Assembly: GCA_002269645.1 (NCBI GenBank)
Contig: NIVC01002603.1
Span: 1 to 64,000, forward strand
Direction of reading: 5' to 3'
DNA length: 64,000 nt
Origin: Macrostomum lignano
Lineage: Eukaryota
Every line of letters begins with the position of its first letter. Position 1 is the stretch's first letter. Both the position numbers and the translations under genes were made by a program. The notes under the pieces were generated by a model. The model worked only from the letters and a program-made list of their open reading frames with translations, ran no database searches and was not told the origin of the DNA. Below, piece by piece: positions 3,350 through 62,500 of the stretch.

Positions 3350-5554
3350 ATACGAGTGGAACTCCTCCTTCGGAGAGAAAGGGGAAGAACTCCCATCACC
3401 GGAATTCTATTCCCTGAAATATCCATCAACTGAAATTCCATGTCTTTAACCCTATCTTCCAAATCGTCTCCAAATTCTTTACAAAATCTTTCAAAGACCA
3501 TAGCTCAAAGACTCTCAAGTCTCTCATATCTCCTCTCTCCTCTCTTTCATCTCATCTCTAACCCTGTTCCCTTATTTATCTCTTCTCCCTCGTCTTTCGT
3601 CTGTACCTTCTCCTGTCTTCTGTCTCCTCTCTTCACTCTTATCTCTCCCTCTTCTCTCCTCTCTCATATGTCATCTCTACTCACTTATCTATCGTCTCTC
3701 TTAACCCTCTCTCTCTCTTCTCTTTTCTCTTCTCTCTGCTCTCATTTCTCATATTTCATATACGCTCTGACACTACTTTCTTGTCTCCCATCTTTCTTCC
3801 TCCTTTTCACTATCCCCTGTCTCTTCTCTTCTCTCTTTTCTATTCTCTCCATTCTCTCTTTTCTCATTTCCTTGCTCCTTTCATCTCTCTCCTCTCTCCT
3901 CACTCTCTTCTCCTTTCGCTTCTCTCTCCTCTCTCTCCTCTCATCTTTACTACCTTATTTATATCTTCTCCCTAGTCTTTCGTCTGTACTCTCTCCTGTC
4001 TCCTCTCTCCCCTCCTCTCTCATCCCTCATCTCCTCATCTCCTCATCTCACTCTTTCTTTCTCCTCTACTCTCCCCTCTCTTCTATTGCCTCTGTACGCT
4101 CTTATCCCTCATCTATTCTCTCTCCTATCATCTCCAATCTGTCATGTCTAATCTCTCCACTCAATTTTACTCTGTTTTCTATCATCTCTTCTCTCTTCTC
4201 TTTTCAGTCTTCTCTTTACTCTCTTCTCTGACTGATTGAAGATGCCAAATCCATCAAAATCCTCTCCGCGAAGCAAAAATCCTGTCTGTGCAACTAAAAA
4301 CCATCGAAATCCTCTCAGTGAAACTGGACTCCTTCGAAATCCTCTCCTTGAAACCTGAATCCATCAAAATTGTTTCCATAAAACAGAAATCAATCATAAA
4401 TTATCTCAGCGAAACAGAAAGCCTCTCCGTGAAGCTGAACATGATCGAAATCCTCTCCGTGAAACTGAACACCATGGAAATCCTTTCGTGAAACTGAACA
4501 TCATCGAAATCCTCTCCACGAAACAGAAATCTTCTCCGTCAGAATTTAAACATTGAAATCGTCTCCGCTAAACTTGACTTAATCGAATTTTTTCCGTCAA
4601 ACAACTTAACTCGCCAGATTCATTAGGGTTAGGGTTAGGGTTAGGGTTAGAACTACGCACAGCTTCGTGTTAAAAGGCACAGATAAAAATATTGAACTAA
4701 TTGAATCAATTCATTGCGCAACCGATTTCACAGTCAGTCAGTATCAGCCTCAGGTAAAGTTAACAAAAGATTGCGCAATCTAAATCAACCCTCCAATCCA
4801 CAGCTGTAGTGAGAAGTTGAACCCTCCCCCAACTTTATCTATTACGTCTTGCAAAACTGAGTACAATATTTGCAAAAAGTTAAAAGTATGGAAATAGTTT
4901 TCCAAATGCTGTGCTTTTTCTTTTCATAGTTAAAGCAAACAACTTATATCCCCGAACTCAGCGTTGCAAGATCTTGCCAGCAATATAAGTTTCTCCTCTC
5001 AAAGTTTAAAACTCGAGGAACAGTTAGCGTTTGAAACTGTCTGATTTATAGCATTGAAGTATCGAGTGTACGTTCACTGCCTGCTTGCAAGTTGATGCAT
5101 TGAATTTCAATGTCCAACAAATACACAGGACTGCCCATTGATAGGCAGGAAAACTTATCAGTAGCCATATCATTGCGCAATTATCTATAAAGTCAGCCAG
5201 TGAGCCAGGGTCCAATTGTACACACGCCGCCAATGAGAACGCGCCCATTCCCCCACAGGAGAGAAAATGCACTGGCGACATAGGAAAAAGTTGTGGCGTA
5301 ATCACTCAAAATTTATGCAATTTTCAGCTCCGAGCAGAAAGAGGGGACAATTAAGATTATCAAAGGTCAAGACCGCCGTTTTCTGCTTTTTTAGGGATCT
5401 TAAAAATTGAAAATGAAAGATTAAAATAGCCTAAAGCCATCCTCGGAAAATTTGCAGTTTTCCCATATAAGTTTCAACGCTGAGTTGCAAGTATTCTAGG
5501 AGGAGTTATCGAACTGACATACAGACAGACAAACAACGCGTCAACTTTAGTATA
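3350..5554 (+). repeat. Long unit, near-identical to 10467-12672 (offset ~7.1 kb)
   Basis: The same ORF-track translations recur at 3440/10557, 4288/11401 and 5024/12138. Confidence 0.9.
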
Positions 5555-8500
5555 TACGAGGCCAACTCCTCCTTCGGAGAAGAAAGGGGAAGAACTCCAA
5601 TCAGCGGAATTCCATTCCCTGAACTCCATCAGCGGAATCCCATTTTTACAACACCTCTCCGCGCAACAGAAATCGTCTCCGTGAAACTGAACACAATCGA
5701 AATCCTCTCCGTGAAACTGAACACCATCGAAATATTCTACGCGAAATAGAAATCCTCTCCGTGAAACTGGACTAAATCGAAATTTCTACGTCAAACAGCC
5801 CAGCTCTAGAATTCATTGGTTAAGGTTAGGGTTAGGGTTAGAGCTACACACAGCTGCGTGTTGAAAGACGCCGTAAAAACATTGAACCAATTAAATTGCG
5901 CAACTTATTTCTCAGGCAGTCAGTATCAGCCTCAGTTAAAGTTAACAAAAAGATTGCGCAATCTAAATCAACCCTCAAATACACAGCAACCGACTCCCCT
6001 TCCAATACGCAGTGCAGCTAGAAATTGAACCCCCCCTCACCAACTATTGGGGGGTCGGTCGAACCCCCATTGAACTCCAAAATGAGAACAATCTTTGCAG
6101 AAAGCTAAAAGTATGAAAATCTTTTCTTGAATGCTGTGAATTTAATTTTCATATTTAAAGCAAAAAACTTATATCCCCGAACTTATCGCAGCAAGATCTT
6201 TCCAGCAATATAAGTTTCTCCTCTCTAAGTTCAAAACTCGAGCAACAGTTAGTGTTTGAAACTTTCTGATTTTAAGCATTGAAATATCGAGTGTACGTTC
6301 ACTGCCTGCTAAAGATGCTCGCAAGTTTATGCATTTAAATGCACTGAATTTCACTGTGCAAAAAATACACAGGGCTTCCTGTTAAAAAACAGAACACAAA
6401 TATTTGCGCAATTGTCTATAAAGTGAGCCAGTGAGCCAGGGTCCAATTGTACACACGCCGCCAATAAGAACGCGCCATTCCCCACAGGAGAGAAAATGCA
6501 CTGGCGACATAGGAAAAAGTTGTGGCGTAATCACTCAAAATTTATGCCAATTTTCAGCTCCGAGCAGAAAGAGGGGACAATTAAGATTATCAAAGGTCAA
6601 GACCGCCGTTTTCTGCTTTTTTAGGGATCTTAAAAATTGAAAATGAAAGATTAAAATAGCCTAAAGCCATCCTCGGAAAATTTTCAGTTTTCCAATATAA
6701 GTTTCAACGCTGAGTTGCAAGTATTCTAGGAGGAGTTATCGAACTGACATACATACAGACAAACAACGCACCACTTTTAGTATTAACGATAGACGAGGCC
6801 AACTCCTCCTTCGGAGAAGAAAGGGGAAGAACTCCAATCAGCGGAATTCCATTCCCTGAACTCCATCAGCGGAATCCCATTTTCAACACCTCTCCGCGCA
6901 ACAGAAATCGTCTCCGTGAAACTGAACACAATCGAAATCCTCTCCGTGAAACTGAACACCATCGAAATATTCTACGCGAAATAGAAATCCTCTCCGTGAA
7001 ACTGGACTAAATCGAAATTTCTACGTCAAACAGCCCAGCTCTTAGAATTCATTGGTTAAGGTTAGGGTTAGGGTTAGAGCTACACACAGCTGCGTGTTGA
7101 AAGACGCCGTAAAAACATTGAACCAATTAAATTGCGCAACTTATTTCTCAGGCAGTCAGTATCAGCCTCAGTTAAAGTTAACAAAAAGATTGCGCAATCT
7201 AAATCAACCCTCAAATACACAGCAACCGACTCCCCTTCCAATACGCAGTGCAGCTAGAAATTGAACCCCCCCCTCACCAACTATTGGGGGTCGGTCGAAC
7301 CCCCATTGAACTCCAAAATGAGAACAATCTTTGCAGAAAGCTAAAAGTATGAAAATCTTTTCTTGAATGCTGTGAATTTAATTTTCATATTTAAAGCAAA
7401 AAACTTATATCCCCGAACTTATCGCAGCAAGATCTTTCCAGCAATATAAGTTTCTCCTCTCTAAGTTCAAAACTCGAGCAACAGTTAGTGTTTGAAACTT
7501 TCTGATTTTAAGCATTGAAATATCGAGTGTACGTTCACTGCCTGCTAAAGATGCTCGCAAGTTTATGCATTTAAATGCACTGAATTTCACTGTGCAAAAA
7601 ATACACAGGGCTTCCTGTTAAAAAACAGAACACAAATATTTGCGCAATTGTCTATAAAGTGAGCCAGTGAGCCAGGGTCCAATTGTACACACGCCGCCAA
7701 TAAGAACGCGCCCATTCCCCCACAGGAGAGAAAATGCACTGGCGACATAGGAAAAAGTTGTGGCGTAATCACTCAAAATTTATGCCAATTTTCAGCTCCG
7801 AGCAGAAAGAGGGGACAATTAAGATTATCAAAGGTCAAGACCGCCGTTTTCTGCTTTTTTAGGGATCTTAAAAATTGAAAATGAAAGATTAAAATAGCCT
7901 AAAGCCATCCTCGGAAAATTTTCAGTTTTCCAATATAAGTTTCAACGCTGAGTTGCAAGTATTCTAGGAGGAGTTATCGAACTGACATACATACAGACAA
8001 ACAACGCACCACTTTTAGTATTAACGATAGACGAGGCCAACTCCTCCTTCGGAGAAGAAAGGGGAAGAACTCCAATCAGCGGAATTCCATTCCCTGAACT
8101 CCATCAGCGGAATCCCATTTTTACAACACCTCTCCGCGCAACAGAAATCGTCTCCGTGAAACTGAACACAATCGAAATCCTCTCCGTGAAACTGAACACC
8201 ATCGAAATATTCTACGCGAAATAGAAATCCTCTCCGTGAAACTGGACTAAATCGAAATTTCTACGTCAAACAGCCCAGCTCTTAGAATTCATTGGTTAAG
8301 GTTAGGGTTAGGGTTAGAGCTACACACAGCTGCGTGTTGAAAGACGCCGTAAAAACATTGAACCAATTAAATTGCGCAACTTATTTCTCAGGCAGTCAGT
8401 ATCAGCCTCAGTTAAAGTTAACAAAAAGATTGCGCAATCTAAATCAACCCTCAAATACACAGCAACCGACTCCCCTTCCAATACGCAGTGCAGCTAGAAA

Positions 8501-10466
8501 TTGAACCCCCCCTCACCAACTATTGGGGGGTCGGTCGAACCCCCATTGAACTCCAAAATGAGAACAATCTTTGCAGAAAGCTAAAAGTATGAAAATCTTT
8601 TCTTGAATGCTGTGAATTTAATTTTCATATTTAAAGCAAAAAACTTATATCCCCGAACTTATCGCAGCAAGATCTTTCCAGCAATATAAGTTTCTCCTCT
8701 CTAAGTTCAAAACTCGAGCAACAGTTAGTGTTTGAAACTTTCTGATTTTAAGCATTGAAATATCGAGTGTACGTTCACTGCCTGCTAAAGATGCTCGCAA
8801 GTTTATGCATTTAAATGCACTGAATTTCACTGTGCAAAAAATACACAGGGCTTCCTGTTAAAAAACAGAACACAAATATTTGCGCAATTGTCTATAAAGT
8901 GAGCCAGTGAGCCAGGGTCCAATTGTACACACGCCGCCAATAAGAACGCGCCCATTCCCCCACAGGAGAGAAAATGCACTGGCGACATAGGAAAAAGTTG
9001 TGGCGTAATCACTCAAAATTTATGCCAATTTTCAGCTCCGAGCAGAAAGAGGGGACAATTAAGATTATCAAAGGTCAAGACCGCCGTTTTCTGCTTTTTT
9101 AGGGATCTTAAAAATTGAAAATGAAAGATTAAAATAGCCTAAAGCCATCCTCGGAAAATTTTCAGTTTTCCAATATAAGTTTCAACGCTGAGTTGCAAGT
9201 ATTCTAGGAGGAGTTATCGAACTGACATACATACAGACAAACAACGCACCACTTTTAGTATTAACGAGGCCAACTCCTCCTTCGGAGAAGAAAGGGGAAG
9301 AACTCCAATCAGCGGAATTCCATTCCCTGAACTCCATCAGCGGAATCCCATTTTCCAACACCTCTCCGCGCAACAGAAATCGTCTCCGTGAAACTGAACA
9401 CCATCGAAATATTCTCCGCGAAATAGAAATCCTCTCCGTGAAACTGGACTAAATCGAAATTTCTACGTCAAACAGCCCAGCTCTCAGAATTCATTGGTTA
9501 AGGTTAGGGTTAGGGTTAGAGCTACACACAGCTGCGTGTTGAAAGACGCCGTAAAAACATTGAACCAATTAAATTGCGCAACTTATTTCTCAGGCAGTCA
9601 GTATCAGCCTCAGTTAAAGTTAACAAAAAGATTGCGCAATCTAAATCAACCCTCAAATACACAGCAACCGACTCCCCTTCCAATACGCAGTGCAGCTAGA
9701 AATTGAACCCCCCCCCACCAACTATTGGGGGGTCGGTCGAACCCCCATTGAACTCCAAAATGAGCACAATCTTTGCAGAAAGCTAAAAGTATGAAAATCT
9801 TTTCTTGAATGCTGTGAATTTAATTTTCATATTTAAAGCAAAAAACTTATATCCCCGAACTCATTGCAGCAAGATCTTTCCAGCAATATAAGTCTCTCCT
9901 CTCTAAGTTCAAAACTCGAGCAACAGTTAGTGTTTGAAACTTTCTGATTTTAAGCATTGAAATATCGAGTGTACGTTCACTGCCTGCTAAAGATGCTCGC
10001 AAGTTTATGCATTAAAATGCACTGAATTTCACTGTGCAAAAAATACACAGGGCTTCCTGTTAAAAAACAGAACACAAATAGTTGCGCAATTGTCTATAAA
10101 GTCAGTCAGTGAGCCAGGGTTCAAGTGTACACACGCAGCCACTGAGAACGCGACCATCCCCCCACTTGAGAGAAAATACACTGCCAAGATAGAAAAATTT
10201 TATGGCGCAATCACTAAAATTTATGCAAATTTTCAGCTCCAAGCAGAAAGAGGGACAATTAAGATTATCAAAGGTCAAGACCGCCATTTTCTGCTTTTTT
10301 AGGGATCTTAAAAATTGAAAATGAAAGATTAAAATAGCCTAAAGCCATCCTCGGAAAATTTGCAGTTTTCCCATATAAGTTTCAACGCTGACTTGCAAGT
10401 ATTCTAGGAGGAGTTATCCAACAAACACACACACACACAGACAAACAACGCACCAACTTTAGTATT
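5555..10466 (+). repeat. Four tandem ~1.2 kb short units
   Basis: Identical 70-aa ORF at 5816, 7052, 8292 and 9494 (spacing 1236, 1240, 1202). Confidence 0.95.
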
Positions 10467-12676
10467 AACGAGTGGAACTCCTCCTTCGGAGGAGAAAGGG
10501 GAAGAACTCCCATCACCGGAATTCTATTCCCTGAAATATCCATCAACTGAAATTCCATGTCTTTAACCCTATCTTCCAAATCGTCTCCAAATTCTTTACA
10601 AAATCTTTCAAAGACCATAGCTCAAAGACTCTCAAGTCTCTCATATCTCCTCTCTCCTCTCTCTCATCTCATCTCTACCCCTGCTCCCTTATTTATCTCT
10701 TCTCCCTCGTCTTTCGTCTGTACCTTCTCCTGTCTTCTGTCTCCTCTCTTCACTCTTATCTCTCCCTCTTCTCTCCTCTCTCATATGTCATCTCTACTCA
10801 CTTATCTATCGTCTCTCTTAACCCTCTCTCTCTCTCTTCTCTTTTCTCTTCTCTCTGCTCTCATTTCTCATATTTCATATACGCTCTGACACTACTTTCT
10901 TGTCTCCCATCTTTCTTCCTCCTTTTCACTATCCCCTGTCTCTTCTCTTCTCTCTTTTCTATTCTCTCCATTCTCTCTTTTCTCCTTTCCTTGCTCCTTT
11001 CATCTCTCTCCTCTCTCCTCACTCTCTTCTCCTTTCGCTTCTCTCTCCTCTCTCTCCTCTCATCTTTACTACCTTATTTATATCTTCTCCCTAGTCTTTC
11101 GTCTGTACTCTCTCCTGTCTCCTCTCTCCCCTGCTCTCTCATCCCTCATCTCCTCATCTCACTCTTTCTTTCTCCTCTACTCTCCCCTCTCTTCTATTGC
11201 CTCTGTACGCTCTTATCCCTCATCTATTCTCTCTCCTATCATCTCCAATCTGTCATGTCTAATCTCTCCACTCAATTATACTCTGTTTTCTATCATCTCT
11301 TCTCTCTTCTCTTTTCAGTCTTCTCTTTACACTCTCTTCTCTGACTGATTGAAGATGCCAAATCCATCAAGATCCTCTCCGCGAAGCAAAAATCCTGTCT
11401 GTGCAACTAAAAACCATCGAAATCCTCTCAGTGAAACTGGACTCCTTCGAAATCCTCTCCTTGAAACTTAAATCCATCAAAATTGTTTCCATAAAACAGA
11501 AATCAATCATAAATTATCTCCGCGAAACAGAAAGCCTCTCCGTGAAGCTGAACATGATCGAAATCCTCTCCGTGAAACTGAACACTATGGAAATCCTTTC
11601 GTGAAGCTGAACATGATCGAAATCCTCTCCACGAAACAGAAATCTTCTCCGTCAGAATTTAAACATTGAAATCGTCTCCGCTAAACTTGACTTAATCGAT
11701 TTTTTTCCGTCAAACAACTCAACTCGCCAGATTCATTAGGGTTAGGGTTAGGGTTAGGGTTAGAACTACGCACAGCTTCGTGTTAAAAGGCACAGATAAA
11801 AATATTGAACTAATTGAATCAATTCATTGCGCAACCGATTTCACAGTCAGTCAGTATCAGCCTCAGGTAAAGTTAACAAAAGATTGCGCAATCTAAATCA
11901 ACCCTCCAATCCACAGCTGTAGTGAGAAGTTGAACCCTCCCCCCAACTTTATCTATTACGTCTTGCAAAACTGAGTACAATATTTGCAAAAAGTTAAAAG
12001 TATGGAAATAGTTTTCCAAATGCTGTGCTTTTTCTTTTCATAGTTAAAGCAAACAACTTATATCCCCGAACTCAGCGTTGCAAGATCTTTCCAGCAATAT
12101 AAGTTTCTCCTCTCAAAGTTTAAAACTCGAGGAACAGTTAGCGTTTGAAACTGTCTGATTTATAGCATTGAAGTATCGAGTGTACGTTCACTGCCTGCTT
12201 GCAAGTTGATGCATTGAATTTCAATGTCCAACAAATACACAGGACTGCCCATTGATAGGCAGGAAAACTTATCAGTAGCCATATCATTGCGCAATTATCT
12301 ATAAAGTCAGCCAGTGAGCCAGGGTCCAATTGTACACACGCCGCCAATGAGAACGCGCCCATTCCCCCACAGGAGAGAAAATGCACTGGCGACATAGGAA
12401 AAAGTTGTGGCGTAATCACTCAAAATTTATGCCAATTTTCAGCTCCGAGCAGAAAGAGGGGACAATTAAGATTATCAAAGGTCAAGACCGCCGTTTTCTG
12501 CTTTTTTAGGGATCTTAAAAATTGAAAATGAAAGATTAAAATAGCCTAAAGCCATCCTCGGAAAATTTGCAGTTTTCCCATATAAGTTTCAACGCTGAGT
12601 TGCAAGTATTCTAGGAGGAGTTATCGAACTGACATACAGACAGACAAACAACGCGTCAACTTTAGTATATATAGAG

Positions 12677-16149: not shown

Positions 16150-17756
16150 TCAGGCGATCAGAAGCAGCAGACGCGTCGCCTTCAGCGACTTCCAAACGCT
16201 GGAGCGTTTCCAGCTCATCCACCTGTGCTCCCCGTGACCAACCACCGGTACAGCAGAGTACACTCCGTTCGGATTGAACAGGGTGCAGCCTCTGAACCAC
16301 CAGCCGCTTCTTCCGTGATATTTATTCGAACAGGAGGCTGTAAGCATATCGTTATCCCGATCCGTAGTTGAGAACATACCTCCGTTGCTAAGGCTTAGTT
16401 TACTTTCCGGAGCGTTCGACTTCGCCGAATCAACGGGCCCGACAGTCAAGGTGTAGTTCGTGCTGCCGTTTTGGACGAGAAAGTTCGAGTACTCCTGATA
16501 CTGCAGCTCGTCGTCCTCCCAGGTCACAACTTGGACGAGAAGATTGACTCCGTTGGCGACAGCCGAGCTGAGCTGGTGAATCGCTTCTAGGCCTACCGAT
16601 TGGCAAAAGTCACAATTCCGTCACAATATCAATACTCTAAGAGTTGAAGCTTAAAATGGACGACTCACCAATCCAGTAGTTGACATCGTCGCCAAAACCG
16701 GTCTCGTACGCACTCCACGACTGCTCGAAGCTGGTGTCGCTCACCCGCTGCTGGATGGGGCAGAATTGTCGACCGTCGGTCATGGTCACTATATTACGCT
16801 TGCACTGAGATCCGGTGTCTGTGGAGGCGTTATGCATGTCCATTGAAAGGTTGGATTTTCTCTTTTTTGATATTTTTATCACTCTCCAGGACGTTTGCGC
16901 TTGTGAGGCTTACTGTTGGCCCAGGCTCGATTCCCAGTGCAGTCACATTAATTTGGGACTGAATTGGAGTCTCGGCTTGGCTCTGCTTGTGAAATTAACG
17001 CCCTTGAGGGCCACCAACCCCCCCCCCCCCCAGACACAGTGAAGTGTGCCTGCTCAGGGGAGTCGGCGAAATGGGCCGGCAGCAATGCCTCTTGCCGGTT
17101 GTGCGACAATGTCGCTTAAAGTGCGCCAGGGTGCACACAGCACAGTCAGCTGCCTCTAAAAATGCACAGAGTGTATTTACCACCTGAAGCTGGAGAGTCA
17201 GGACAGATATGCTCATTTTGTGTGCGCTTGTGCGCTTGTGACTCATCGTATAATTAACACTAATGCTGTTATCTCTGAATGCAGGTGGATTAATGTTGGA
17301 CAAATACCTAGTCCTAAAACTGATTAATCGTTCTCTTCCTGGTTAATTGGCTGCTCACTTGCTTCGCTTGCGCGCCTCCTATGACCGAGGCTGTACTCAG
17401 GTAGACCGAAGCTGGCGAGGCCTCCGTTCTGGTTTGACATCCGGCACTCGGAGCTGTCCGGTGAGAAGCTGAATGTCCGACAGTAGCTGCGGCTGCTGCA
17501 CAGAGCAGCGCAGTGAATCTTGCTGCTGGCAACCGATCTGGTCACCTGGGCGAACTCGGCGAAAAGATTTGGTGAACTCGATTCGAATTTGAACTCTAAA
17601 GCCTCTAAAATTTGAGTTCAGTGAGTGTGCGATGAGAATGGCGTTTCGGGTTGGTCGCAAAAAAAATTTAAAAGGTAATTGCTCACGTCCATCAGCATTG
17701 ACCGCCAACATTAACGTCAGGATTACAAATGGTAAAATTTGCTTTAATTCAGTCAT
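16150..17756 (-). CDS. Secreted PAN/Apple + fibrinogen C-terminal (FReD) protein, copy B, ~302 aa, 4 exons
   Basis: Exons 17756-17687 (signal peptide MTELKQILPFVILTLMLAVNADG), 17604-17359 (PAN), 16818-16669 and 16592-16150. All introns are phase-1 GT-AG; total 909 nt. Motifs FSTTDRDND, GWWFRGC, NPNG. Confidence 0.9.
16918..17165 (+). mobile_element. SINE family 1, internally deleted copy in an intron of gene B
   Basis: GGCTCGATTCCCAGTGCAGTCACATTAATTTGGG; lacks the CCTAACGATAATATAAAGTTAGG segment. Confidence 0.8.
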
Positions 17757-44643: not shown

Positions 44644-47283
44644 GGCAGGCAGGCAGACAGACAGACAGACAGACAGACAGACAGGCAGGCAGACAGACAA
44701 ACACAGACAGGCAGGCAGACAGACAGCCCAGGCCCTCACCGAAACGCCCTGTAGAGGCCGCCGTTGCCGTCCGGGCTGCTCTGGATGCGGTGCCTGTCAG
44801 CCAGTAGCACCCTGCCGTCCAGCCCAACGCAGGGAAAGGTGAACTGCTTGAAGAACACGACATTCTCCCGTCGGAGACCGAAATAATTCTGCTGTTCAAA
44901 GAATTTTACGGTGCCGGCCTGAGTAGCCTCGGAGGTCATGATGTACCACACGATGCCGCCACCGGCTCGCCCTGGAAACCGCTGTTCGGCCATCGCCTGC
45001 ACCCGGACGGCCTTCTCCGCGTGCAGTTGGAACAGCGACTTGCCAGATGGCAGGCCAACTCTGCAAGCCGGTGAGCGAGTTGTGTTTTATGGCGACTAAT
45101 AATAAACTAATAATTTTACTAGCAGTAGAGAAGATAGAAAACGTCCATTTAAAAAATGCATGAAATAAACTAAACTATTGAACATCAGAGTACACAATCT
45201 TCTTTTTGTATATCACACCTGCCCTCCCACCTGTCTGTCACTCTTACCATACCTGTCCTCCCACCCATCTGTCACTCTTACCATACCTGTCCCCCCCCCA
45301 TCTGTCACTCTTACCATACCTGTCCTCCCCACCCCCATCTGTCACTCTTACCATACCTGTCCTCCCACCTGTCAGACAACAGGCTACCTGTCCTCCAACC
45401 ATCCTTCCCAGCATACCCCAGTCAGTGACTCACTCGTACAGTCCCTTAGGATAGCGCACGCCCAGCCGAGTCGCCTGCCCGCCAGCCAGCAGGATGACGC
45501 CAACGCGACCGTCGGCGACCGCCTCCAAGCCGATGTCGCGAAGCCTGGCCACCTCCTCCGGCGCGGTGTAGGAGCGGCCGCCGCAGGCGTCCGGTGGGAT
45601 CGGGCTGTGAATGCAAGAATTTGGGGTGGCAGATAGATCCTGAGACTCTCGGGGACGGCAGATAGATCATGACAGATTCTCTGAGACGGCAGATAGATCA
45701 TGACAGATTCTCGGAGACGGTAGACAGATCATGACAGATTCTCAGGGACGGTAGATAGATCATGACAGATTCTCAGGGACGGCAGATAGATCATGACAGA
45801 TTATCAGGGACGGCAGATAGATCATGACAGATTATCAGGGATGGCAGATAGATCATGACAGATTCTTAAGGATGGCAGACAGATCATGACAGATTCTAAG
45901 GGATGGCAAATAGATCATGACAGATTCTAAGGGATGGCAAATAGATCATGATAGATTCTAAAGGATGGCAGATAGATCATGACAGATTCTCAGGGACGGC
46001 AGATAGATCATGACAGATTCTAAAGGATGGCAGATAGATCATGACAGATTCTCAGGGACGGCAGATAGATCATGACAGATTCTAAAGGACGGCAGATAGA
46101 TCATGACAGATTATCAGGGACGGCAGATAGATCATGACAGATTATCAGGGACGGCAGATAGATCATGACAGATTATCAGGGATGGCAGATAGATCATGAC
46201 AGATTCTTAAGGATGGCAGACAGATCATGACAGATTCTAAAGGATGGCAGATGGATCATGACAGATTCTAAGGGATGGCAAATAGATCATGACAGATTCT
46301 TAAGGATGGCAGACAGATCATGACAGATTCTAAGGGATGGCAAATAGATCATGACAGATTCTAAGGGATGGCAAATAGATCATGATAGATTCTAAAGGAC
46401 GGCAGATAGATCATGACAGATTATCAGGGACGGCAGATAGATCATGACAGATTATCAGGGATGGCAGATAGATCATGACAGATTCTTAAGGATGGCAGAC
46501 AGATCATGACAGATTCTAAAGGATGGCAGATGGATCATGACAGATTCTAAGGGATGGCAAATAGATCATGACAGATTCTTAAGGATGGCAGACAGATCAT
46601 GACAGATTCTAAGGGATGGCAAATAGATCATGACAGATTCTAAGGGATGGCAAATAGATCATGATAGATTCTAAAGGACGGCAGATAGATCATGACAGAT
46701 TATCAGGGACGGCAGATAGATCATGACAGATTCCCAGGAATGGCAGCTAGGTTGGATCTGCTTCAGGGATTCCCGATGAAAATGGTACCAAGGCCAAGAG
46801 GCGTCCACTTGCGTCGCCCTTAAGTCGTTTCAGAGTCGTTGCAGGTAATACAGGTAAACTAGGTGGGAAGTGAGTCAAGTGACTCCAGACGACTCTAAAA
46901 CGACGAGATGTCACGGTACAAGTCGCCAAACAGTAGTAAAAAAGTCGCCTAAGAATCAACTTAAAGATGTTTTATTTTCTGCGACTGTGAAAGGACTCTG
47001 AGAAGGCAGGTACATTCTTAAATCTGCTTCAGGGATGACAACAAAAAATGACCAACCGAAAATCGTCAGCTTCCAGTTCAGTGTTGGAATTTTTCGCCTC
47101 AGATCGCTGAGCCAAGGCATCCTTGACAATGGCAGGCAGTGCTGGCCAATCCACCCGTTCAATATGCTTGAGCAGTTTAGCCTGCTCAGATTCTGTCAGA
47201 GAATCATAGAAGTTCAGCAAGTGCAATTGTCCAGCTGCGCTGAGCTGCTGGCGAGCATTTTCAAGTCGGCTGGCAAGACTCAT
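42097..47283 (-). CDS. UAP1: UDP-N-acetylhexosamine pyrophosphorylase, ~509 aa, 5 exons
   Basis: Exons 47283-47057, 45604-45434, 45060-44740, 43339-42815 and 42382-42097; all introns phase 2; total 1530 nt. Motifs [65 protein letters not shown]. Confidence 0.95.
42445..42785. repeat. ~23-bp minisatellite in UAP1 intron 4
   Basis: GATTGCAACTCTCACTCC core. Confidence 0.9.
43375..44725. repeat. (CAGA/CAGG)n microsatellite in UAP1 intron 3
   Basis: Read directly. Confidence 0.98.
45210..45400. repeat. ~33-36-bp repeat in UAP1 intron 2
   Basis: CTGTCACTCTTACCATACCTGTCC core, about 5 copies. Confidence 0.85.
45625..46745. repeat. 31-bp minisatellite in UAP1 intron 1
   Basis: GGCAGATAGATCATGACAGATTCTCAGGGAC. 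Confidence 0.95.
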
Positions 47284-49259
47284 GATGTTGCAGGATTTGT
47301 ATAGGTGAGGTAGACTTTGTTTCTTTGATTGATAAACTCAAATTTGTTTAGGCTGATCTAGTATCAATAATAACATGAAGAAACAAGATTTTTGTACAAA
47401 ATAATTTTGTAATTCAAAGATTCATTAGCAAAATATATACAAGCAATAGCCTATAATACTACAAGACTTAAGTCTAGAGTTTCATTTTAATTATTTATAT
47501 CATAAGTAAATTTAGAATGTTACTATAGGATCATGTTCACTAATAGAACTTGCTAGACTTACTAATCAAATACCTACTAAAACTTATAATAATATATAAT
47601 ATAGAATTATAGAATTATAGAATATAGAAAACTATATCAATATTATATAGAAAAATAATATAACACAATTATATTAAAAAGCAAATTAACTTGTTTTTTG
47701 ATAAGTTTTTTGTAGCCCTTAATATTCTAGCATTTTATTTGTCTACTAAACTGCATATTCCCAATAACCACTTTTTACCATAGTTTGAATCATCTAGATT
47801 AGATTTTTCTAGTATTCAAGGGAAAATTTTAGCATAGGCCTCTCCCACTCCTTAATCTTACACTCCCCTAATACATTAGAAAATTCCTGTGTACAATAGA
47901 ACTGAAAAATAGTTGTTATAAAGTATCTAGTGTATGGAACAATCTACCAGAAAATTGTGCCACAGAGCCACCATATGACATAGCTGTTGGTATACAAAAA
48001 GACCAAAATTTTGTAATGCACAAAAGATTCTTGTATTGTTGTAACACTTTTGATAATGTTTAGCATATATACCATGCTCAAGAATGCATGCCAGAATCAA
48101 AGATGAACAAAGCTACCAATTCACACCAAGCATGCCAACATTTTTAGTCAACTGTTTCATGTATGCTAAGCATGCCAAAATTTTAATGACCCTTTTTACT
48201 ATGCATGTCAAATATACTATAGGCCTAATGTTTTGACCCCTAAATTTTAGGCTTTAAAAAACACTGATACTTTTTTAAAATAATTATTCAACAATAACAA
48301 CAAATTATACTATGTTTTGATTATTAGAAGGCAATATATTATTATTTAGGTCTAGAGTCCAACCAAGATCTCAATATTGAAATTTCAAGACTTGGCCTTT
48401 TTAGGTCATTTTGAGAAATTCTTAAAATTTTGAGAATGGGCTTAGAATTTGAGAACAGTCAAGCAAGATTGAATTCAATATAGAAAGTGTTAAAATATTA
48501 TGAAGTGCCAAATAAAAGAAACAAATAATGCATTGTCTAATGCATAATTAGCACTTTTTTGTTTTGTTTGTTGGTATATTTACAGCTTTTTAAAAATTAA
48601 AATATATTAATATTTTACTTCTATGAAACAGATTTAAACACAAGTTTTATCTGTATTTTTTCACACAGAAAATAGTGTTTTAGTATTAAAATACAGATAA
48701 CCCCAATATAGGCTAAAATTTATATATAACTTATCATACATAAATTGTGGTGGACCAAGGGTAAGTCGCAAAAATGCCCAGCCTAGAGAATATAGACATA
48801 GTAATAATTAGATGACGAGGCATTTAGCCCTTATAAGACAGTCATAGTTACTCCTGCCGTTTACTCAAAATTGCATTAGGGTTTCTTTTACAAGTCACAT
48901 TTTTGGTCAAAAAGTAAGTTGCATGGCCAGTGTAAATCAGGGGGTTGCGCATGTATGGTTAGAAATATATTCTTGTTTTGAATCTATCATTTCATTTTGA
49001 TCTTATCTTAAACAAAATCTCAATATCAACCACCTGTTAAAAAGTAAAATGTTTTTGCTATACTATAGGCCTACCTATAAATTGCACTACTGGAATACCA
49101 CTACCAGATCCATAGCCATTAGAAAATAGGTTCCATTCTGGTGCCTGGGTGCTGGAACTCTAGCTATTGCTTTTATGGTGTAGGGGGCCACTTTTTCCTA
49201 CTGTGTAATAGATTTGAGAGTGTGGAGGCGTCCTTATATATTCCAATTAATGCATATTT

Positions 49260-57118: not shown

Positions 57119-59454
57119 TCACGATGTCGAATGATGCATTCTGCGCTGCCCGTGCCCTGGGAACGGCAGCAGAGCCTCGGTTGCTGCGTCAGCCTCGTCA
57201 ACTCCTTCGGATTCTTCAACAACCTGCATCGTCCTTGGCTGCTGATGCCTCGGCTGCAGCTGCTGCTGCTGCTGTTGTTGCAGTTGTCGACGTTCCAACT
57301 GGTTCAACAGGCCAAGCTCTGCGCGTAGATCGGCGCTTTCATCCCGGTGAAGTCCACCCGAGTAGTCAAATATGGGTCGGATTGGCAGGCCAGCGTAGTC
57401 TATGGTGTGCTGTTGCTGCTGCTGCGGGCGGAAGTTATTTGACGGCCGGGGCAACCTTGGCGGTGGATGAGCACCGTTGGTGCTGACGCTGTCTGGCAGG
57501 CGGTGCAGCTCCATCTGCTGCGACTGTTTCGGCTGCTGACTCTCCTGACGCTGCGGTTCAATTTTTAAAGTCTCAGCCGGAGTTTCAGTCATGGTTGCAA
57601 CGTCTGTCAGAGTTGCCGTGCCGTTGCTGGGGTACTGAGTTTCCTGGAAGTTAATAGTAAATATTTTGTTTTCTTCTGTTTATGCATTGGCGTTTTGAAG
57701 CAATGTACATGGGTAGAGAGAAGACGGGGTAGTTCCCAGTTCACTCAGCTATGATTTGTTGGCACAAGACCTACAGGGGTAGAGAGGTAATGGGTGAATG
57801 GGATGGTGCTCAGTTCACTCAGTTATCATTGGTTGACTTAGACCATACTACATTGGGGTAGAGAGGGAATGGGGGTAGCGCTCAGTTCACTCAGTTATCA
57901 TTGGTTGACTTAGACCATACTGCATTGGGGTAGAGAGGGAATGGGGATGGCGCTCAGTTCACTCAGTTATCATTGGTTGACTTAGACCATACTGAATTGG
58001 GGTAGAGAGGGAATGGGGGTGGCGCTCAGTTCACTCAGTTATCATTGGTTGACTTAGACCATACTGCATTGGGGTAGAGAGGGAATGGGGATGGCGCTCA
58101 GTTCACTCAGTTATCATTGGTTGACTTAGACCATACTGCATTGGGGTAGAGAGGGAATGGGGATGGCGCTCAGTTCACTCAGCTATCATTGGTCGGTACT
58201 AGATCCTTACTCGTACTTTGCTTGCTACTACGAGCGTACATGTATATGTTTAGTACACAACACTACACGAAAGTTCCCCTAAAATGGGCAAAGCAAGCAT
58301 AGCTATATAAAAAAATGCTCAAAAAGTGACATACCACATTGTCGCACCTAGATGACAGTCGAGACCTTCTTAGTCGCCTGTCCAATCTTCGACGCCTGAA
58401 GTTTGAGAATTCAGTTTTACTGTGAAGCTTTCTCAATTTTATTGCTATAGAACCATATAATAAGAATAGAAAATACAATGGTACAATAGTTTAGCGAATC
58501 CGACACAGAAACGGAATATTAAATTAGCAACAATCGCTACTGCAAGTAGAGTGCAAAGCTGATTTTACAACATAAAAACTCACTATAGACAACACCCACT
58601 TACACTTTGTAAAGCATCAGACAGACGGACAGCAATACAATAGCTAGGACGGCAAAGACCGCCACGAACACAACACCAAGGGCGGCGGAGGAAATGGGCG
58701 CGGCTACCGCTGCCTGGCTCTGGTAAACTGCGGCGCCTTCTGAAATACATGTAACAACACGATAATTGAAGGCATAAAAAATAAATAATTACTAGGTGCA
58801 AGCTATACTATAAATATTTTTAGTACACTACTAATAGTAAGCGAATATGCGCTTGAACGTAAAACTTGACGCACGACATTGAAATTCTAAATAAGGTTAA
58901 GATCGAATTAAGAGACACAGCAATTTGGTGAGCATTATATACGGCTACAAACCTGGCAAGGTACCAGGCCAACAAGAAAAGGGCACCAATTACGCAACAG
59001 GCTGTGCCTATGGCAACGCTAGTCAGCAGTCTGTCTGTTTGTCGCACTGACCGGCTTGACAAGTACGCTGTCGTATAAAATCAATGATATGGCTGAGTTT
59101 GGAACAATTAAATAGGTCAAGTCTGCTTTAATAACCTTTCTTTCATTTTTGATTAGTGCAAAACTAATAATTTATCATACGTCCATTATTCTTTCTAATG
59201 CTCCTTCTACTGTCTATCTATCTATGATAGATTGAATATCTGGCAACAGGAGATTTGAGTCCTTGCTTTCAGATAGCAGCTGGTCATTAGCGACTATTGG
59301 ACTCCATTGGATTGTTATGGATTCTTGATTGGATACGTGAAATAGAGACGGGCGGTAACATAGGTGTGTATGAGCCCTGGGTAGGATAAATGTCAGACAA
59401 AAGAAGGCTGCTATCTATCTATCCATCTATTTATCTATCTATCTATCCATCTAT

Positions 59455-59522
<68 letters not shown>

Positions 59523-62500
59523 ATATCTATCTATCTATCTATCTATCTATGCAGACAGTCGATGTTATCTAATGTCATCTAATGTTCTCTAATTTTATTT
59601 AAAATCTTCTAATCTCATTCAATGTTTTCTAATGTCATCTAAGGTTCTCTAACATTTTAATGATTTCTAATGTCATCTACTGTTTTCTATTGTCATTTAG
59701 TGTCATCTAAATAAATCAAACGGTTCTGACCATCCCCGTATTACTTAAGAACTCTGCGCAGTCACGAGGAGTGGCAGCGGTTGAGCCGTTAGCGGTGTCA
59801 GGCAAGCATCTGCAAGGCGCGCAGGTTGTGACAGATCTGTGTTAGTTTTCCTGTACTCGGTTAGCAAGCTGTCAAGTTAGAGAGGCAGACAGAGTTATTT
59901 TAAGAGCAAAAATTAGCATTCAGGTGATAAATATTAGTTTTAGAATGGCAGTTTCTTTCTTTCTGCTCAGAGCGGACTGGGCGGGTACCTTGATAATCAA
60001 ACTTTTCGCACAAAGTTCCCGTGTAAAATGCTGGGCAGCTGAAAGTTTGGTAAAAATATTTTTAATGATGTTGAACTCTGAACATGCGTGCTATTCAATA
60101 CCTGCTTAGCTTATACCTGTTTGGTATCCTTGAAATTGATCTTTGGGATCTTTGCCTTGGATTGTTGGGATCTTTGCAATGGATTGTTGGGATCTTTGCC
60201 TTGGATTGTTGGGATCTTTGCCTTGGATTGTTTTTATCTTTGCATTGGATTGTTGGGATCTTTGCCTTGGATTGTTGGGATCTTTGCAATGGATTGTTGG
60301 GATCTTTGCCTTGGATTGTTTTTATCTTTGCCTTGGATTGTTGGGATCTTTGTTTTGGATTGTTGGGATCTTTGTTTTAGATTGTTGGGATCTTTTCAAT
60401 AGATTGTTGGGATTTTTGCCTTGGATTGTTGGGATCTTTTCCTTGGATTGTTGGGATCTTTGCCTTGGATTGTTGGGATCTTTGCCTTGGATTGTTGGGA
60501 TCTTTGCCTTGGATTGTTGGGATCTTTGCCTTGGATTGTTGGGATCTTTGCCTTGGATTGTTGGGATTTTTGCCTTGGATTGTTGGGATCTTTGCCTTGG
60601 ATTGTTGGGATCTTTGTTTTGGATTGTTGGGATCTTTTCCTTGGATTGTTGGGATCTTTGCCTTGGATTGTTGGGATCTTTGTTTTGGATTGTTGGGATC
60701 TTTTCAATAGATTGTTGGGATCTTTGCCTTGGATTGTTGGGATCTTTTCCTTGGATTGTTGGGATCTTTGCCTTGGATTGTTGGGATCTTTGCCTTGGAT
60801 TGTTGGGATCTTTGCCTTGGATTGTTGGGATCTTTGCCTTGGATTGTTGGGATCTTTGCCTTGGATTGTTGGGATCTTTGCCTTGGATTGTCACCTGTAC
60901 TTACATGCACACCTGCTTCTCGGTCAGTTGGTCCACAGTGCAGGTGCCGCCGTGCAGACACTTGGTGGAACTGTCACACACCAGTCTTCGGGTGGGCTCG
61001 CGCTGGACCGCGGGCTCGACTGCGGATGGTGTCGGAATGGCGGTGTGGGAATGGCGGTGTGGGAATGGCGGTGTGGGAATGGTGGTGTGGGAATGGGGGT
61101 TTGGGAATGGCAGTGTGGGAATGGCAGTGTGGGAATGGCATGATGTCGATTTGAGGACACTAGCTACGAAGGTGAGGAACAGCAACCCGGACTCACCCTT
61201 CAACACGATGCTGCTGGCGGCTGAGCCGTTCAGATTGCGGAACACGCAGGTGTAGTTGCCCGCCGAATCGCTGTAGTTTTTCAGCGTCAGGCGGGTCATC
61301 ACGGTGCCGGACCTGCGCGGTTGTGCGGTTCGATACGATGGACTGACAGCTCATGTAAACTTTTCTCGGCCTCCCCATCAAGATTCCAACATCCCGATCA
61401 AAATTCCAAAATCCCCATCAAAATTCCAACATCCCAGTCAAGATTCCAACATCCCAATTAAGATTCCAACATCCCAATCAAGATTTCAACATTCCAATCA
61501 AGATTCAAACATCCCAATCAAGATTCCAACATCCCAATCAAGATTCCAACATCCCAATAAAGATTCCAACATCCCAATTAAGATTTTAACATTCCAATCA
61601 AGATTCAAACATCCCAATCAAAATTCCAACATCCCAATCAAGATTCCAACATCCCAATAAAGATTCCAACATCCCAATTAAGATTTTAACATTCCAATCA
61701 AGATTCAAACATCCCAATCAAAATTCCAACATCCCAATCAAGATTCCAACATTCCAATCAAAATTCCAACATCCTAATTAAAATTCCAACATCCCAATCA
61801 AGATTCCAACATTCCAATCAAAATTCCAACATCCTAATTAAAATTCCAATATCCCAATCAAGATCCCAACATTCCAATAAAAATTCCAACATCCCCATTA
61901 AGATCCTAACATCCCAATCAAGATCCCAACATCTCCATCAAGATCCCAGCACCCTTATTACGATGGCCGTATCCTTAAAGATCTTAACATCCTCATAAAG
62001 CTTCTATCCTTATAAATTTTTGAGCACACGCTTTAGGTATATTAATGTGCTCAAACATCCAAGAAGCCCCGCCCAGTGGACTCACTTAGTCCGAAACTGA
62101 GCCACGCAGTCTTTCGTCTGCTGCACCTCGACTCCGTCCTTCAGCCAGTGCGGCCGCGGCATCGGCTGCCCCCGCGCTGAGCAGAGCAGCCTGCGGCGAC
62201 CGCCGGAGCCTCCGCGAAGACGAGCCTCCTGAGTGACTTCGGGCGCTTCGGCTGGAATGAAAAATCGAGAATTAAGTTGAGAGTCCAATGTTTGTCCAAT
62301 TTTGTGGGATTGGGATTTGTGTGGGATTTGTGTGGGGTTTGTGTTGGATTGGTGTGGAATTGGTGTGGGATTTGTGTGAGATTGGTGTGGGATTTGTGTG
62401 GGGATTTGTGTGGGATTTGTGTGGAATTGGTGTGGGATTTGTGAGTGATTTGTGTGGGATTGGTGTGGAATTGGTGTGGGATTTGTGTGGGATTTGTGTG

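What the first reader, a model, noticed from the sequence alone, without database searches (positions are those of the whole stretch)
59745..60038. Two mutually exclusive EGF C-terminal exons: NRG1 alpha/beta-style splicing in an invertebrate neuregulin-like gene
Seen: the shared EGF exon (61019-60905) ends after Cys4 in phase 2. Two tandem exons follow, each phase 2-in/1-out and each supplying Cys5 and Cys6: CPAFYTGTLC and CLPDTANGSTAATPRDC. Including both shifts the frame, so only one can be used. Established: ErbB ligands have a splice site between EGF Cys4 and Cys5, and vertebrate NRG1 alpha/beta isoforms swap this segment to change receptor potency. Inference: the same switch exists here, by ancestry or by convergence. 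Neither exon appears in the supplied ORF track, and automated models often keep only one.
Basis: partly seen in the sequence, partly recalled or inferred. Interest (0 to 1): 0.8.

Follow-up and report, generated by a model that had tools for sequence, protein, structure and literature searches.

The report
Flatworm neuregulin gene, one unproven extra exon
The region is part of the already described neuregulin-type growth-factor gene of the flatworm Macrostomum lignano. The first small exon is real, while the second "alternative" exon fits in reading frame but has no transcript, protein or conservation support, so it is a cheap lead to test and not a discovery.

Summary
On the minus strand, exon 61019-60905 ends two bases into the codon after EGF Cys4. 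Exon A (60038-59989) and candidate exon B (59809-59745) both enter in phase 2 and leave in phase 1. Each supplies two cysteines, and including both shifts the frame.

The gene is Macrostomum lignano BOX15_Mlig015540g1 (PAA56579.1). It is the Ig-EGF-TM "NRG" ligand already printed in Barberán et al. 2016.

Exon A is used in all six database proteins, in the 2016 transcript-derived sequence, and in A-type form in a 48%-identical paralog. Exon B appears in none of them.

Against B:
- Its Cys5-Cys6 loop is 15 residues, whereas every NRG compared has 8, and it lacks the aromatic-x-Gly motif.
- The Pfam EGF match stops just past Cys5.
- It shows no similarity to exon A.
- The bare pattern arises by chance at 0.15-0.7 per interval.

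For B:
- GC is 57% against 30-44% in the flanks, the best contrast of 43 pattern matches.
- It has a CAG acceptor, an ACTAAC 32 nt upstream and a GTAA donor.

The three genomic copies are about 99% identical in exons and introns alike, so conservation says nothing. My estimate is about 20% for a true A/B switch, about 12% for some other use of B, and most likely an unused pseudo-exon. RNA-seq junction counts would settle it.

The parts
62086..62251 (-). Ig-domain exon 1 (166 nt, phase 1-in/2-out). It encodes ...PEAPEVTQEARLRGGSGGRRRLLCSARGQPMPRPHWLKDGVEVQQTKDCVAQFRT(K).
   Evidence: The concatenated exons reproduce P0001 residues 174-561 exactly. Pfam I-set scores 35.1 bits.
61197..61312 (-). 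Ig-domain exon 2 (116 nt, phase 2-in/1-out), SGTVMTRLTLKNYSDSAGNYTCVFRNLNGSAASSIVLK.
60905..61019 (-). Shared EGF exon encoding Cys1-Cys4 (115 nt, phase 1-in/2-out). The donor is GTAAGT.
60143..60891 (.). 22-bp minisatellite (34 copies) that fills the intron between the EGF exon and exon A.
59989..60038 (-). Exon A (50 nt, phase 2-in/1-out). It encodes a canonical EGF C-loop, (I)CPAFYTGTLCEKFDYQ, with C5-x8-C6 and Y-x-G. The donor is weak (AAG|GTACCC).
   Evidence: It is present in all 6 cluster proteins and in the 2016 published sequence. Pfam EGF scores 21.9 bits over profile positions 1-30 of 32.
59745..59809 (-). Candidate exon B (65 nt, phase 2-in/1-out). It encodes (I)CLPDTANGSTAATPRDCAEFL, with C5-x15-C6 and an N-G-S sequon. 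The acceptor is CGCGCCTTGCAG| and the donor is TTAA|GTAATA. It is unannotated and unsupported by any protein on record.
   Evidence: GC is 0.57 against 0.30-0.44 in the flanks. It ranks first of 43 in GC contrast. It is absent from database proteins. The Pfam EGF match stops at profile position 26.
59841..59846 (-). ACTAAC branch-point-like hexamer. Its branch A lies 32 nt upstream of exon B's acceptor AG. The only AG in between (ACAG, 4 nt downstream of the hexamer) lies too close to the branch A to be used.
   Evidence: Read directly. This is a consensus match only, not a functional test.
58604..58739 (-). Stalk plus transmembrane exon (136 nt, phase 1-in/2-out), GAAVYQSQAAVAAPISSAALGVVFVAVFAVLAIVLLSVCLMLYK. 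It accepts either A or B in frame.
   Evidence: Kyte-Doolittle 19-residue maximum is 3.25.
58335..58395 (-). Juxtamembrane basic exon (61 nt, phase 2-in/0-out), (V)RRRLDRRLRRSRLSSRCDNV.
57119..57643 (-). Last coding exon, the Q-rich cytoplasmic tail, ending at TGA 57121-57119.

Best explanation
Window 57119-62251 (minus strand) is the 3' two-thirds of the Macrostomum lignano neuregulin-type EGFR-ligand gene BOX15_Mlig015540g1.

The gene encodes a type-I membrane pro-ligand. Its parts are an N-terminal NRG2_N-like region (outside the window), an I-set Ig domain, one EGF module, a short stalk, a TM helix and a Q-rich tail.

The EGF module is encoded in two pieces, as in ErbB ligands generally. 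One exon carries Cys1-4. After a phase-2 intron in the codon before Cys5, a 50-nt exon (A) carries the canonical Cys5-x8-Cys6 loop. Exon A then splices to the stalk/TM exon. That is the shown part, and it is the only isoform on record.

Candidate exon B lies 179 nt downstream of A. It is most likely a fortuitous, phase-compatible pseudo-exon that is not used, or used only at noise level. It happens to begin with a Cys codon and holds a second one 15 residues later, but it does not encode an EGF C-loop.

By inference from family knowledge, the protein acts as a membrane-tethered or shed EGFR ligand. M. lignano has 8 EGFR genes according to Barberán et al.
For: Gene identity:
- P0001 (PAA56579.1) matches at 97% identity over 100% of the query. 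My query used a different Ig-exon-2 acceptor.
- The window is identical to L001 (NIVC01002603.1).
- The corrected exon model reproduces P0001 residues 174-561 exactly.
- Pfam gives I-set and EGF matches.
- The same sequence is printed as 'Macrostomum lignano NRG' in the supplement of PMC4914847.

Only isoform A is seen:
- All six members of the 90% cluster carry it. They come from two independent annotations.
- The transcriptome-derived 2016 sequence carries it.
- The 48%-identical paralog has an A-type loop, CPEEYMGFFC.
- Nine hypothetical full-length B-containing products are absent from a 15-billion-protein collection.

B does not look like an EGF C-loop:
- It has 15 rather than 8 residues and no aromatic-x-Gly.
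- The Pfam EGF match falls from 21.9 bits (profile 1-30) to 18.7 bits (profile 1-26).
- Every NRG-type ligand printed has C5-x8-C6.
- B has no nucleotide or protein similarity to A beyond shuffles.

Chance is adequate for the bare pattern: 0.47-0.73 expected, or P = 0.15 by block shuffle. As a control, a second 'meaningful' pseudo-exon, a TM-like one at 59034-58953, was found by eye in the same intron. It is also explained by chance.
Against: B is the most exon-like of all 43 pattern matches in the window. Its GC is 0.57 in an intron of 0.30-0.44, similar to the real exons at 0.42-0.68. It has a CAG acceptor with 59% pyrimidines, an ACTAAC 32 nt upstream and a GTAA donor. None of the other 41 matches reaches B on all three measures.

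B sits exactly where NRG1 has its second EGF exon, and with the same length class. Exon A's own donor (GTACCC) is weak, as is often seen next to regulated exons.

The absence of B from protein databases is weak evidence. They hold one model per locus, and no RNA-seq could be examined.
Confidence: 0.55

Rival explanations
1. This is the first reader's reading: a true mutually exclusive pair. Exon B replaces exon A in a minority or tissue-specific isoform. The resulting membrane pro-ligand has a long, N-glycosylated, non-canonical third EGF loop with altered or lost receptor binding, analogous to NRG1 alpha/beta. Exclusivity is enforced by the frameshift that occurs when both exons are included.
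For: The phases and the in-frame joins are correct. B has exon-like GC and usable splice signals, and it ranks first of 43 pattern matches. It has the same position and the same 2-mod-3 length class as NRG1 E68/E59 (plus my arithmetic). The Cys4/Cys5 split is the ErbB-ligand hallmark.
Against: No transcript or protein contains B. The C5-C6 spacing of 15 has no precedent among the NRG-type ligands. The Pfam EGF match is lost after Cys5. B has no homology to A. No docking/selector complementarity was found. The bare pattern is expected by chance at 0.15-0.7.
Confidence: 0.2
2. B is a real exon but is used differently. One option is a cassette after A: the frame shifts to ...FDYQDACLTPLTAQPLPLLVTAQSS and stops at the exon's last codon. 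That would give a TM-less soluble ligand, or an NMD-targeted 'poison' isoform that tunes expression. The other option is an alternative terminal exon read through to ...CAEFLSNTGMVRTV*, with AATAAA/ATTAAA 85-145 nt downstream. That would resemble the NRG1 '3'-stalk soluble isoforms.
For: The A+B frame stays open through all of B and stops exactly at its last three bases. The read-through of B stops after 10 more codons. Poly(A)-signal hexamers lie at 59661 and 59599. NRG1 beta3 arises by read-through of E59. B has exon-like composition.
Against: No such product is on record. The A+B tail adds an unpaired seventh Cys. Under this reading the exact placement of a Cys codon at the first full codon in the mutually exclusive frame would be a coincidence.
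Confidence: 0.12
3. B is a decayed relic of an ancient tandem duplication of exon A. It was once an alpha/beta-like pair and is now non-functional. It keeps its phase, its splice-site remnants and its two cysteines but has lost the loop length and motif.
For: The position, phase and Cys-first-codon arrangement mimic A. The loop is degenerate.
Against: There is no residual A/B similarity at the DNA or protein level. A relic has no reason to keep exon-like GC. This cannot be told apart from pure chance with the data at hand.
Confidence: 0.08

Closest known systems
Vertebrate NRG1 EGF-alpha (exon E68) / EGF-beta (exon E59) alternative exons
   Same: Both have a shared exon for the N-terminal part of the EGF domain, followed by two tandem small exons that supply the C-terminal loop, followed by stalk/TM exons. 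Both lengths are 2 mod 3 (68 and 59, against 50 and 65 here), so double inclusion shifts the frame. Cys5 is the first full codon; for NRG1 this is my arithmetic from the exon sizes in PMC3176322 and the protein sequence. NRG1 also makes soluble '3' isoforms by read-through.
   Different: NRG1 alpha and beta are clearly homologous, both having C-x3-F-T-G-x-R-C. Both are canonical C5-x8-C6 loops, both are documented in transcripts, and they differ 10-100-fold in potency. Here only A is canonical and documented. B has x15, no motif, no similarity to A and no transcript evidence.
'Macrostomum lignano NRG' of Barberán, Martín-Durán & Cebrià 2016 (PMC4914847); GenBank PAA56579.1 / PAA75429.1 / PAA83473.1
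   Same: It is the same gene, and the printed sequence matches isoform A.
   Different: Nothing differs for isoform A. That paper and the annotations do not mention a second C-loop exon.
ErbB-ligand EGF modules as defined by Stein & Staros 2006 (PMC1618406), including Drosophila Vein
   Same: There is a splice site between Cys4 and Cys5, and the EGF module lies next to the TM segment. Both hold here.
   Different: The Arg before Cys6, conserved in most ligands, is Leu in exon A and Phe in the paralog. In B the residue is Asp, with Arg at position -2. Tomoregulins also lack this Arg. Receptor binding is untested.
M. lignano paralog A0A1I8HAW4 / A0A1I8GRW9 / A0A1I8H3C4 (P0073, P0156, P0157)
   Same: It has the same architecture (N-terminal region, Ig, EGF, TM), is 48% identical, and has an A-type loop, CQCPEEYMGFFC.
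   Different: It has a longer stalk between Cys6 and the TM segment. It is known only from UniRef models, and its genomic locus could not be retrieved. Whether it has a B-like exon is therefore unknown.

Membership tests
NRG-type EGFR ligand (Ig + EGF + TM; Barberán et al. 2016) | An immunoglobulin I-set domain N-terminal to the EGF domain | tested here: met
   PF07679 scores 35.1 bits against a cut-off of 23.7 on P0001 residues 188-267. The domain is encoded by window exons 62251-62086 and 61312-61197.
NRG-type EGFR ligand (Ig + EGF + TM; Barberán et al. 2016) | A single six-cysteine EGF domain | tested here: met
   Isoform A reads C-x5-C-x5-C-x10-C-x-C-x8-C. PF00008 scores 21.9 bits against a cut-off of 21.5 on the fragment, but only 15.5 bits in the full-length scan, so this is borderline.
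NRG-type EGFR ligand (Ig + EGF + TM; Barberán et al. 2016) | A transmembrane segment downstream of the EGF domain | tested here: met
   AALGVVFVAVFAVLAIVLLSVCLMLY is followed by RRRLDRRLRR. The hydropathy maximum is 3.25.
ErbB-ligand EGF module (Stein & Staros 2006) | [quoted passage not shown] | tested here: met
   A phase-2 intron lies in the Ile codon between Cys4 and Cys5. The criterion is quoted.
ErbB-ligand EGF module (Stein & Staros 2006) | The EGF module lies close to the TM domain | tested here: met
   About 25 residues separate Cys6 from the hydrophobic core.
ErbB-ligand EGF module (Stein & Staros 2006) | A conserved Arg immediately before Cys6 | tested here: not met
   Exon A has G-T-L-C, the paralog has G-F-F-C and exon B has P-R-D-C. 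Most comparators have R-C. Tomoregulins are cited as an exception.
ErbB-ligand EGF module (Stein & Staros 2006) | Binds and activates an EGFR/ErbB receptor | not testable with these tools
   This needs a biochemical or RNAi experiment.
NRG1 alpha/beta-type mutually exclusive EGF C-loop exons | Two tandem exons with the same entry and exit phase, with double inclusion out of frame | tested here: met
   The exons are 50 nt and 65 nt, both phase 2-in/1-out. Including A and B together leads to a stop at the end of B.
NRG1 alpha/beta-type mutually exclusive EGF C-loop exons | Both exons encode a canonical C5-x8-C6 loop with aromatic-x-Gly | tested here: not met
   A does. B has x15 and no motif. 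The Pfam EGF alignment ends at profile position 26 of 32 in isoform B. All comparators have x8.
NRG1 alpha/beta-type mutually exclusive EGF C-loop exons | The two exons are recognisably homologous (a tandem duplication) | tested here: not met
   Local alignments of A and B with their flanks do no better than shuffles. For DNA, 34% of shuffles score at least as high. For protein, 53-71% do.
NRG1 alpha/beta-type mutually exclusive EGF C-loop exons | Both splice products are observed | tested here: inconclusive
   A is seen. B was not found in cluster members or in exact look-ups. However, no RNA-seq was accessible. The similarity search with an isoform-B query failed even to recover P0001. The metagenome scan lacked the A junction as well.
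NRG1 alpha/beta-type mutually exclusive EGF C-loop exons | The second exon is conserved in relatives above the intron background | tested here: inconclusive
   B is 100% identical in the three genomic copies. Introns and exons both differ by only about 1%, so there is no contrast. The paralog locus and other species were not retrievable.

The most novel reading that the evidence does not exclude
A free-living flatworm's neuregulin-type gene carries an NRG1 alpha/beta-like pair of mutually exclusive exons for the third EGF loop. The second exon would encode an unprecedented 15-residue, N-glycosylatable Cys5-Cys6 loop. This would be either an ancestral bilaterian switch or a convergent one. It might produce a natural altered-specificity or antagonist ligand isoform in an animal with eight EGFR genes.
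Probability: 0.18. Interest if true: 0.6.

Novelty: already known. Interest (0 to 1): 0.28.

Why it matters
If exon B were used, it would be the first alpha/beta-type EGF-loop switch outside vertebrates. It would occur in a regeneration model where EGFR signalling controls stem-cell differentiation. It would also date the switch, or show it evolved twice, because the intron position and phase already match NRG1.

As things stand, the demonstrable content is a known gene with the known ErbB-ligand split-EGF structure. The practical value is a precise and inexpensive test: the A and B RT-PCR products differ by 15 nt.

There is also a caution for genome scans. Phase-compatible pseudo-exons that look meaningful are common in these introns.

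Tried and rejected
1. Three-copy comparison (g1, g2, g3; L001-L003). Exon B is identical in all three, but so is the whole 450-nt neighbourhood. Exons are no more conserved than introns across the gene, at about 1% divergence. This is uninformative.
2. Protein similarity search with an isoform-B query. It returned nothing at all, not even P0001, so the word index is too sparse for a negative result to count.
3. Exact look-up of nine hypothetical products: B-for-A, A+B truncated, and B read-through, each for the three copies. None is on record, which is weak negative evidence.
4. Paralog route. The exhaustive HMMER search found a 48%-identical paralog. Its locus is not in the accessible assemblies, nor in the window or fetched loci.
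6. Could the GC island be a non-coding RNA? There was no Rfam match. The fold is weaker than shuffles, with z = +1.6.
7. Docking/selector RNA pairing for mutually exclusive splicing. Only 10-nt AT-rich inverted repeats were found.
8. Exon B as part of a repeat family. It is single-copy in the window.
9. Scan of the metagenome/metatranscriptome collection for the EGF>B junction. It was empty, but the EGF>A control was empty too.
10. A second candidate, a TM-like alternative exon at 59034-58953. I considered and rejected it as probable chance: 0.24 expected, a poor acceptor and lower hydropathy.
11. A literature search for the gene ID found nothing.
Full report
**Observation.** I read the minus strand of 59600-61200 and translated the three segments.
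- The exon at 61019-60905 is preceded by CCGCAG and followed by GTAAGT. It encodes EPAVQREPTRRLVCDSSTKCLHGGTCTVDQLTEKQVC (Cys1-4) and ends two bases into the next codon.
- Exon A (60038-59989, 50 nt) completes that codon as Ile. It then reads CPAFYTGTLCEKFDYQ with one base left over.
- Candidate exon B (59809-59745, 65 nt) also completes an Ile and reads CLPDTANGSTAATPRDCAEFL with one base left over.
- The next annotated exon (58739-58604) starts with two bases that complete a codon, so either A or B joins it in frame.
- Joining A and B together shifts the frame and stops at the TAA made by the last three bases of B. Skipping both also shifts the frame.

**What the gene is.** I hand-spliced a model from the surrounding exons: two Ig exons, the EGF exon, A, the TM exon, a basic juxtamembrane exon and a Q-rich last exon.
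- This model retrieved one protein cluster at 97% identity and full coverage. The hit is Macrostomum lignano BOX15_Mlig015540g1, PAA56579.1, 561 aa.
- The window is identical to contig NIVC01002603.1.
- With one acceptor corrected, the exon coordinates reproduce residues 174-561 of that protein exactly. Exon 1 lies beyond the window's end.
- Pfam finds an I-set Ig domain and an EGF domain. It also gives a sub-threshold match of the N-terminal region to NRG2_N.
- Barberán et al. 2016 (PMC4914847) define NRG-type ligands as Ig + EGF + TM and list one for M. lignano. Their supplement prints 'Macrostomum lignano NRG', which is this protein with exon A.
- Stein & Staros 2006 (PMC1618406) characterise ErbB ligands by a splice site between Cys4 and Cys5 and by closeness of the EGF module to the TM segment. 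Vein has that splice site. Both criteria are met here.
- The conserved Arg before Cys6 is not present. It is Leu in exon A and Phe in the paralog.

The gene and its split EGF module are therefore already known.

**Evidence on exon A.** A is used in all six members of the cluster. They come from two independent annotations of two assemblies. It is also used in the transcriptome-derived 2016 sequence. An exhaustive HMMER search of 1.84 billion representatives found, besides giant multi-Ig proteins, one real relative. This is a 48%-identical M. lignano paralog with the same architecture and an A-type loop, CQCPEEYMGFFC. Exon A gives the canonical C-x-C-x5-G-x2-C. With A, the Pfam EGF model aligns through profile position 30 of 32 at 21.9 bits.

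**Evidence against exon B being an alternative EGF loop.**
- None of the database proteins contains B.
- Nine constructed B-containing products (B for A, A+B, and B read-through, for each of the three gene copies) are absent from the 15-billion-sequence collection.
- B's Cys5-Cys6 spacing is 15 residues. Its content is Ser/Thr/Ala/Pro-rich, with an N-G-S sequon and no aromatic-x-Gly.
- The Pfam EGF alignment of isoform B stops at profile position 26, just past Cys5, and drops to 18.7 bits.
- Every NRG-type ligand printed in the Barberán supplement has eight residues between Cys5 and Cys6. These include priapulid, fly, bryozoan, nemertean, annelid, mollusc, five flatworm, amphioxus and human sequences.
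- A and B, with 40-nt flanks, show no similarity beyond shuffles at the DNA or protein level. NRG1 alpha and beta, by contrast, are obvious duplicates.

- It occurs 43 times on the two strands of the window. That gives 0.73 expected in the 2165 nt between the EGF and TM exons.
- After masking tandem repeats the density is 0.41/kb, or 0.47 expected in the 1127 unique bases.
- Shuffling the interval in 60-nt blocks gives at least one hit in 15% of trials.

The bare pattern is therefore unremarkable.

As a control, I found by eye a second 'meaningful' candidate in the same intron. It is an 82-nt segment (59034-58953) with the same phases as the TM exon, and it encodes a TM-like peptide. Such segments occur at 0.25/kb/strand, and it has a poor acceptor. 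This shows how readily phase-compatible pseudo-exons arise here.

**Evidence for exon B being an exon of some kind.**
- B has 57% GC in an intron of 30-44%. This is like the real exons, which range from 42 to 68%.
- Among the 43 pattern matches it has the largest exon-minus-flank GC contrast. None of the other 41 equals it jointly on GC contrast, donor match and polypyrimidine content.
- Its acceptor (CGCGCCTTGCAG) resembles those of the real EGF and Ig2 exons.
- An ACTAAC lies 32 nt upstream.
- Its donor is GTAATA, while exon A's own donor, GTACCC, is weak.

These criteria were applied after the fact. GC-rich islands also make open frames and TGC codons more likely. I take them as raising the chance that B is spliced in some form. 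They do not establish it.

**Conservation.** The gene exists in three genomic copies (g1-g3). B is identical in all three. However, the copies differ by only about 1% everywhere, and exons are no better conserved than introns. For example, there are 3 differences in the 115-nt EGF exon. This says nothing about constraint. The informative comparison would be with the paralog's locus or with other Macrostomum species. Neither could be retrieved.

**Other readings of B.** If B follows A, the frame stays open through B and ends at its last codon. This predicts a TM-less product ending ...FDYQDACLTPLTAQPLPLLVTAQSS, or an NMD substrate. If B's donor is ignored, the frame ends 10 codons later, and AATAAA/ATTAAA hexamers lie at 59661 and 59599. 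NRG1 makes soluble '3' isoforms in this way (PMC3176322). I found no ncRNA or unusual RNA structure in the GC island. I found no docking/selector complementarity.

**Comparison with NRG1.** PMC3176322 states that inclusion of exon E68 or E59 gives the EGF-alpha or EGF-beta variant. It also states that beta is 10-100 times more potent, and that '3'-stalk isoforms are truncated and soluble. These exons are named by length, which is my own knowledge. Both are 2 mod 3. From the protein sequences, each fits one base, then 22 or 19 codons beginning with Cys5, then one base. That is the same phase-2-in/phase-1-out arrangement as exon A here, by my inference. The intron position and phase are thus probably ancestral. 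That supports orthology of the split, not the existence of a second exon in the flatworm.

**Verdict.** The central inference, an alpha/beta-style switch, is untested and weaker than it was presented. My probabilities are:
- B unused: about 0.55, plus 0.08 for B as a decayed relic.
- A true mutually exclusive A/B pair: about 0.2.
- B used as a cassette or terminal exon: about 0.12.

The decisive data are RNA-seq junction counts or an RT-PCR across the EGF and TM exons.

Noticed in passing
window 58953-59067 (-), candidate 59034-58953: A second GC-rich island lies in the A-to-TM intron. An 82-nt AG...GT segment there has the same phases as the real TM exon. It would encode (D/N)RLLTSVAIGTACCVIGALFLLAWYLA(R), a TM-like alternative without the stalk. 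It is probably chance: 0.24 expected, a purine-rich acceptor, and hydropathy of 2.25 against 3.25 for the real TM segment.
   Followed up: partly
L001 10001-10516 (exon 1, outside the window); P0001 residues 129-152: The N-terminal region of this protein and of its paralog gives weak, sub-threshold matches to Pfam NRG2_N (PF25518). The scores are 17.4 and 14.4 bits against a cut-off of 27. The motif YILFLTPTED...FLPV resembles human NRG2 YIFFLEPTEQ...FAPL as printed in the Barberán supplement. This suggests the NRG2-type N-terminal domain is ancient.
   Followed up: partly
window 61372-61948, 61028-61139, 60143-60891, 59411-59550, 57796-58193: Each of the five introns between Ig exon 1 and the last exon, except the short TM-to-juxtamembrane intron, carries its own minisatellite or microsatellite. 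The periods are 20, 14, 22, 4 and 72 bp. The CTAT array is 140 nt in copy g1, about 400 nt in g2 and about 2.4 kb in g3.
   Followed up: partly
L001, L002, L003 (NIVC01002603.1, NIVC01000884.1, NIVC01000418.1): The whole locus exists in three copies that are about 99% identical in unique sequence. The copies share the same order of flanking genes: guanylate cyclase, NRG, a 379-aa gene, and (seen in L001 only) UDPGP. This is consistent with the known partial genome duplication of the DV1 line. Coding and intronic divergence are alike.
   Followed up: partly
window 16153-16620 (-): An open frame here contains a fibrinogen C-terminal globular domain (PF00147, 76 bits). Similar frames nearby, at about 14.4-16.9 kb, suggest a small cluster of fibrinogen-related genes.
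   Followed up: no
window 45433-47337 (-): These are exons of a UDP-sugar pyrophosphorylase (UDPGP/UAP1-like) gene. The region matches the PF01704 gene called at the end of L001.
   Followed up: no
window ~5000-12600: A unit of about 1.24 kb is repeated in tandem. The same open frames recur at 5810, 7046, 8286 and about 9400, and again at 6172, 7408 and 8648. The array is flanked by Ser/Leu-rich low-complexity frames at 700-1700, 3400-4200 and 10500-11300.
   Followed up: no
The word-indexed protein search recovered P0001 only when the query included the Q-rich tail. A 221-aa query sharing about 190 residues with P0001 returned no hits. Negative results from that tool are therefore unreliable for this gene.
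   Followed up: yes
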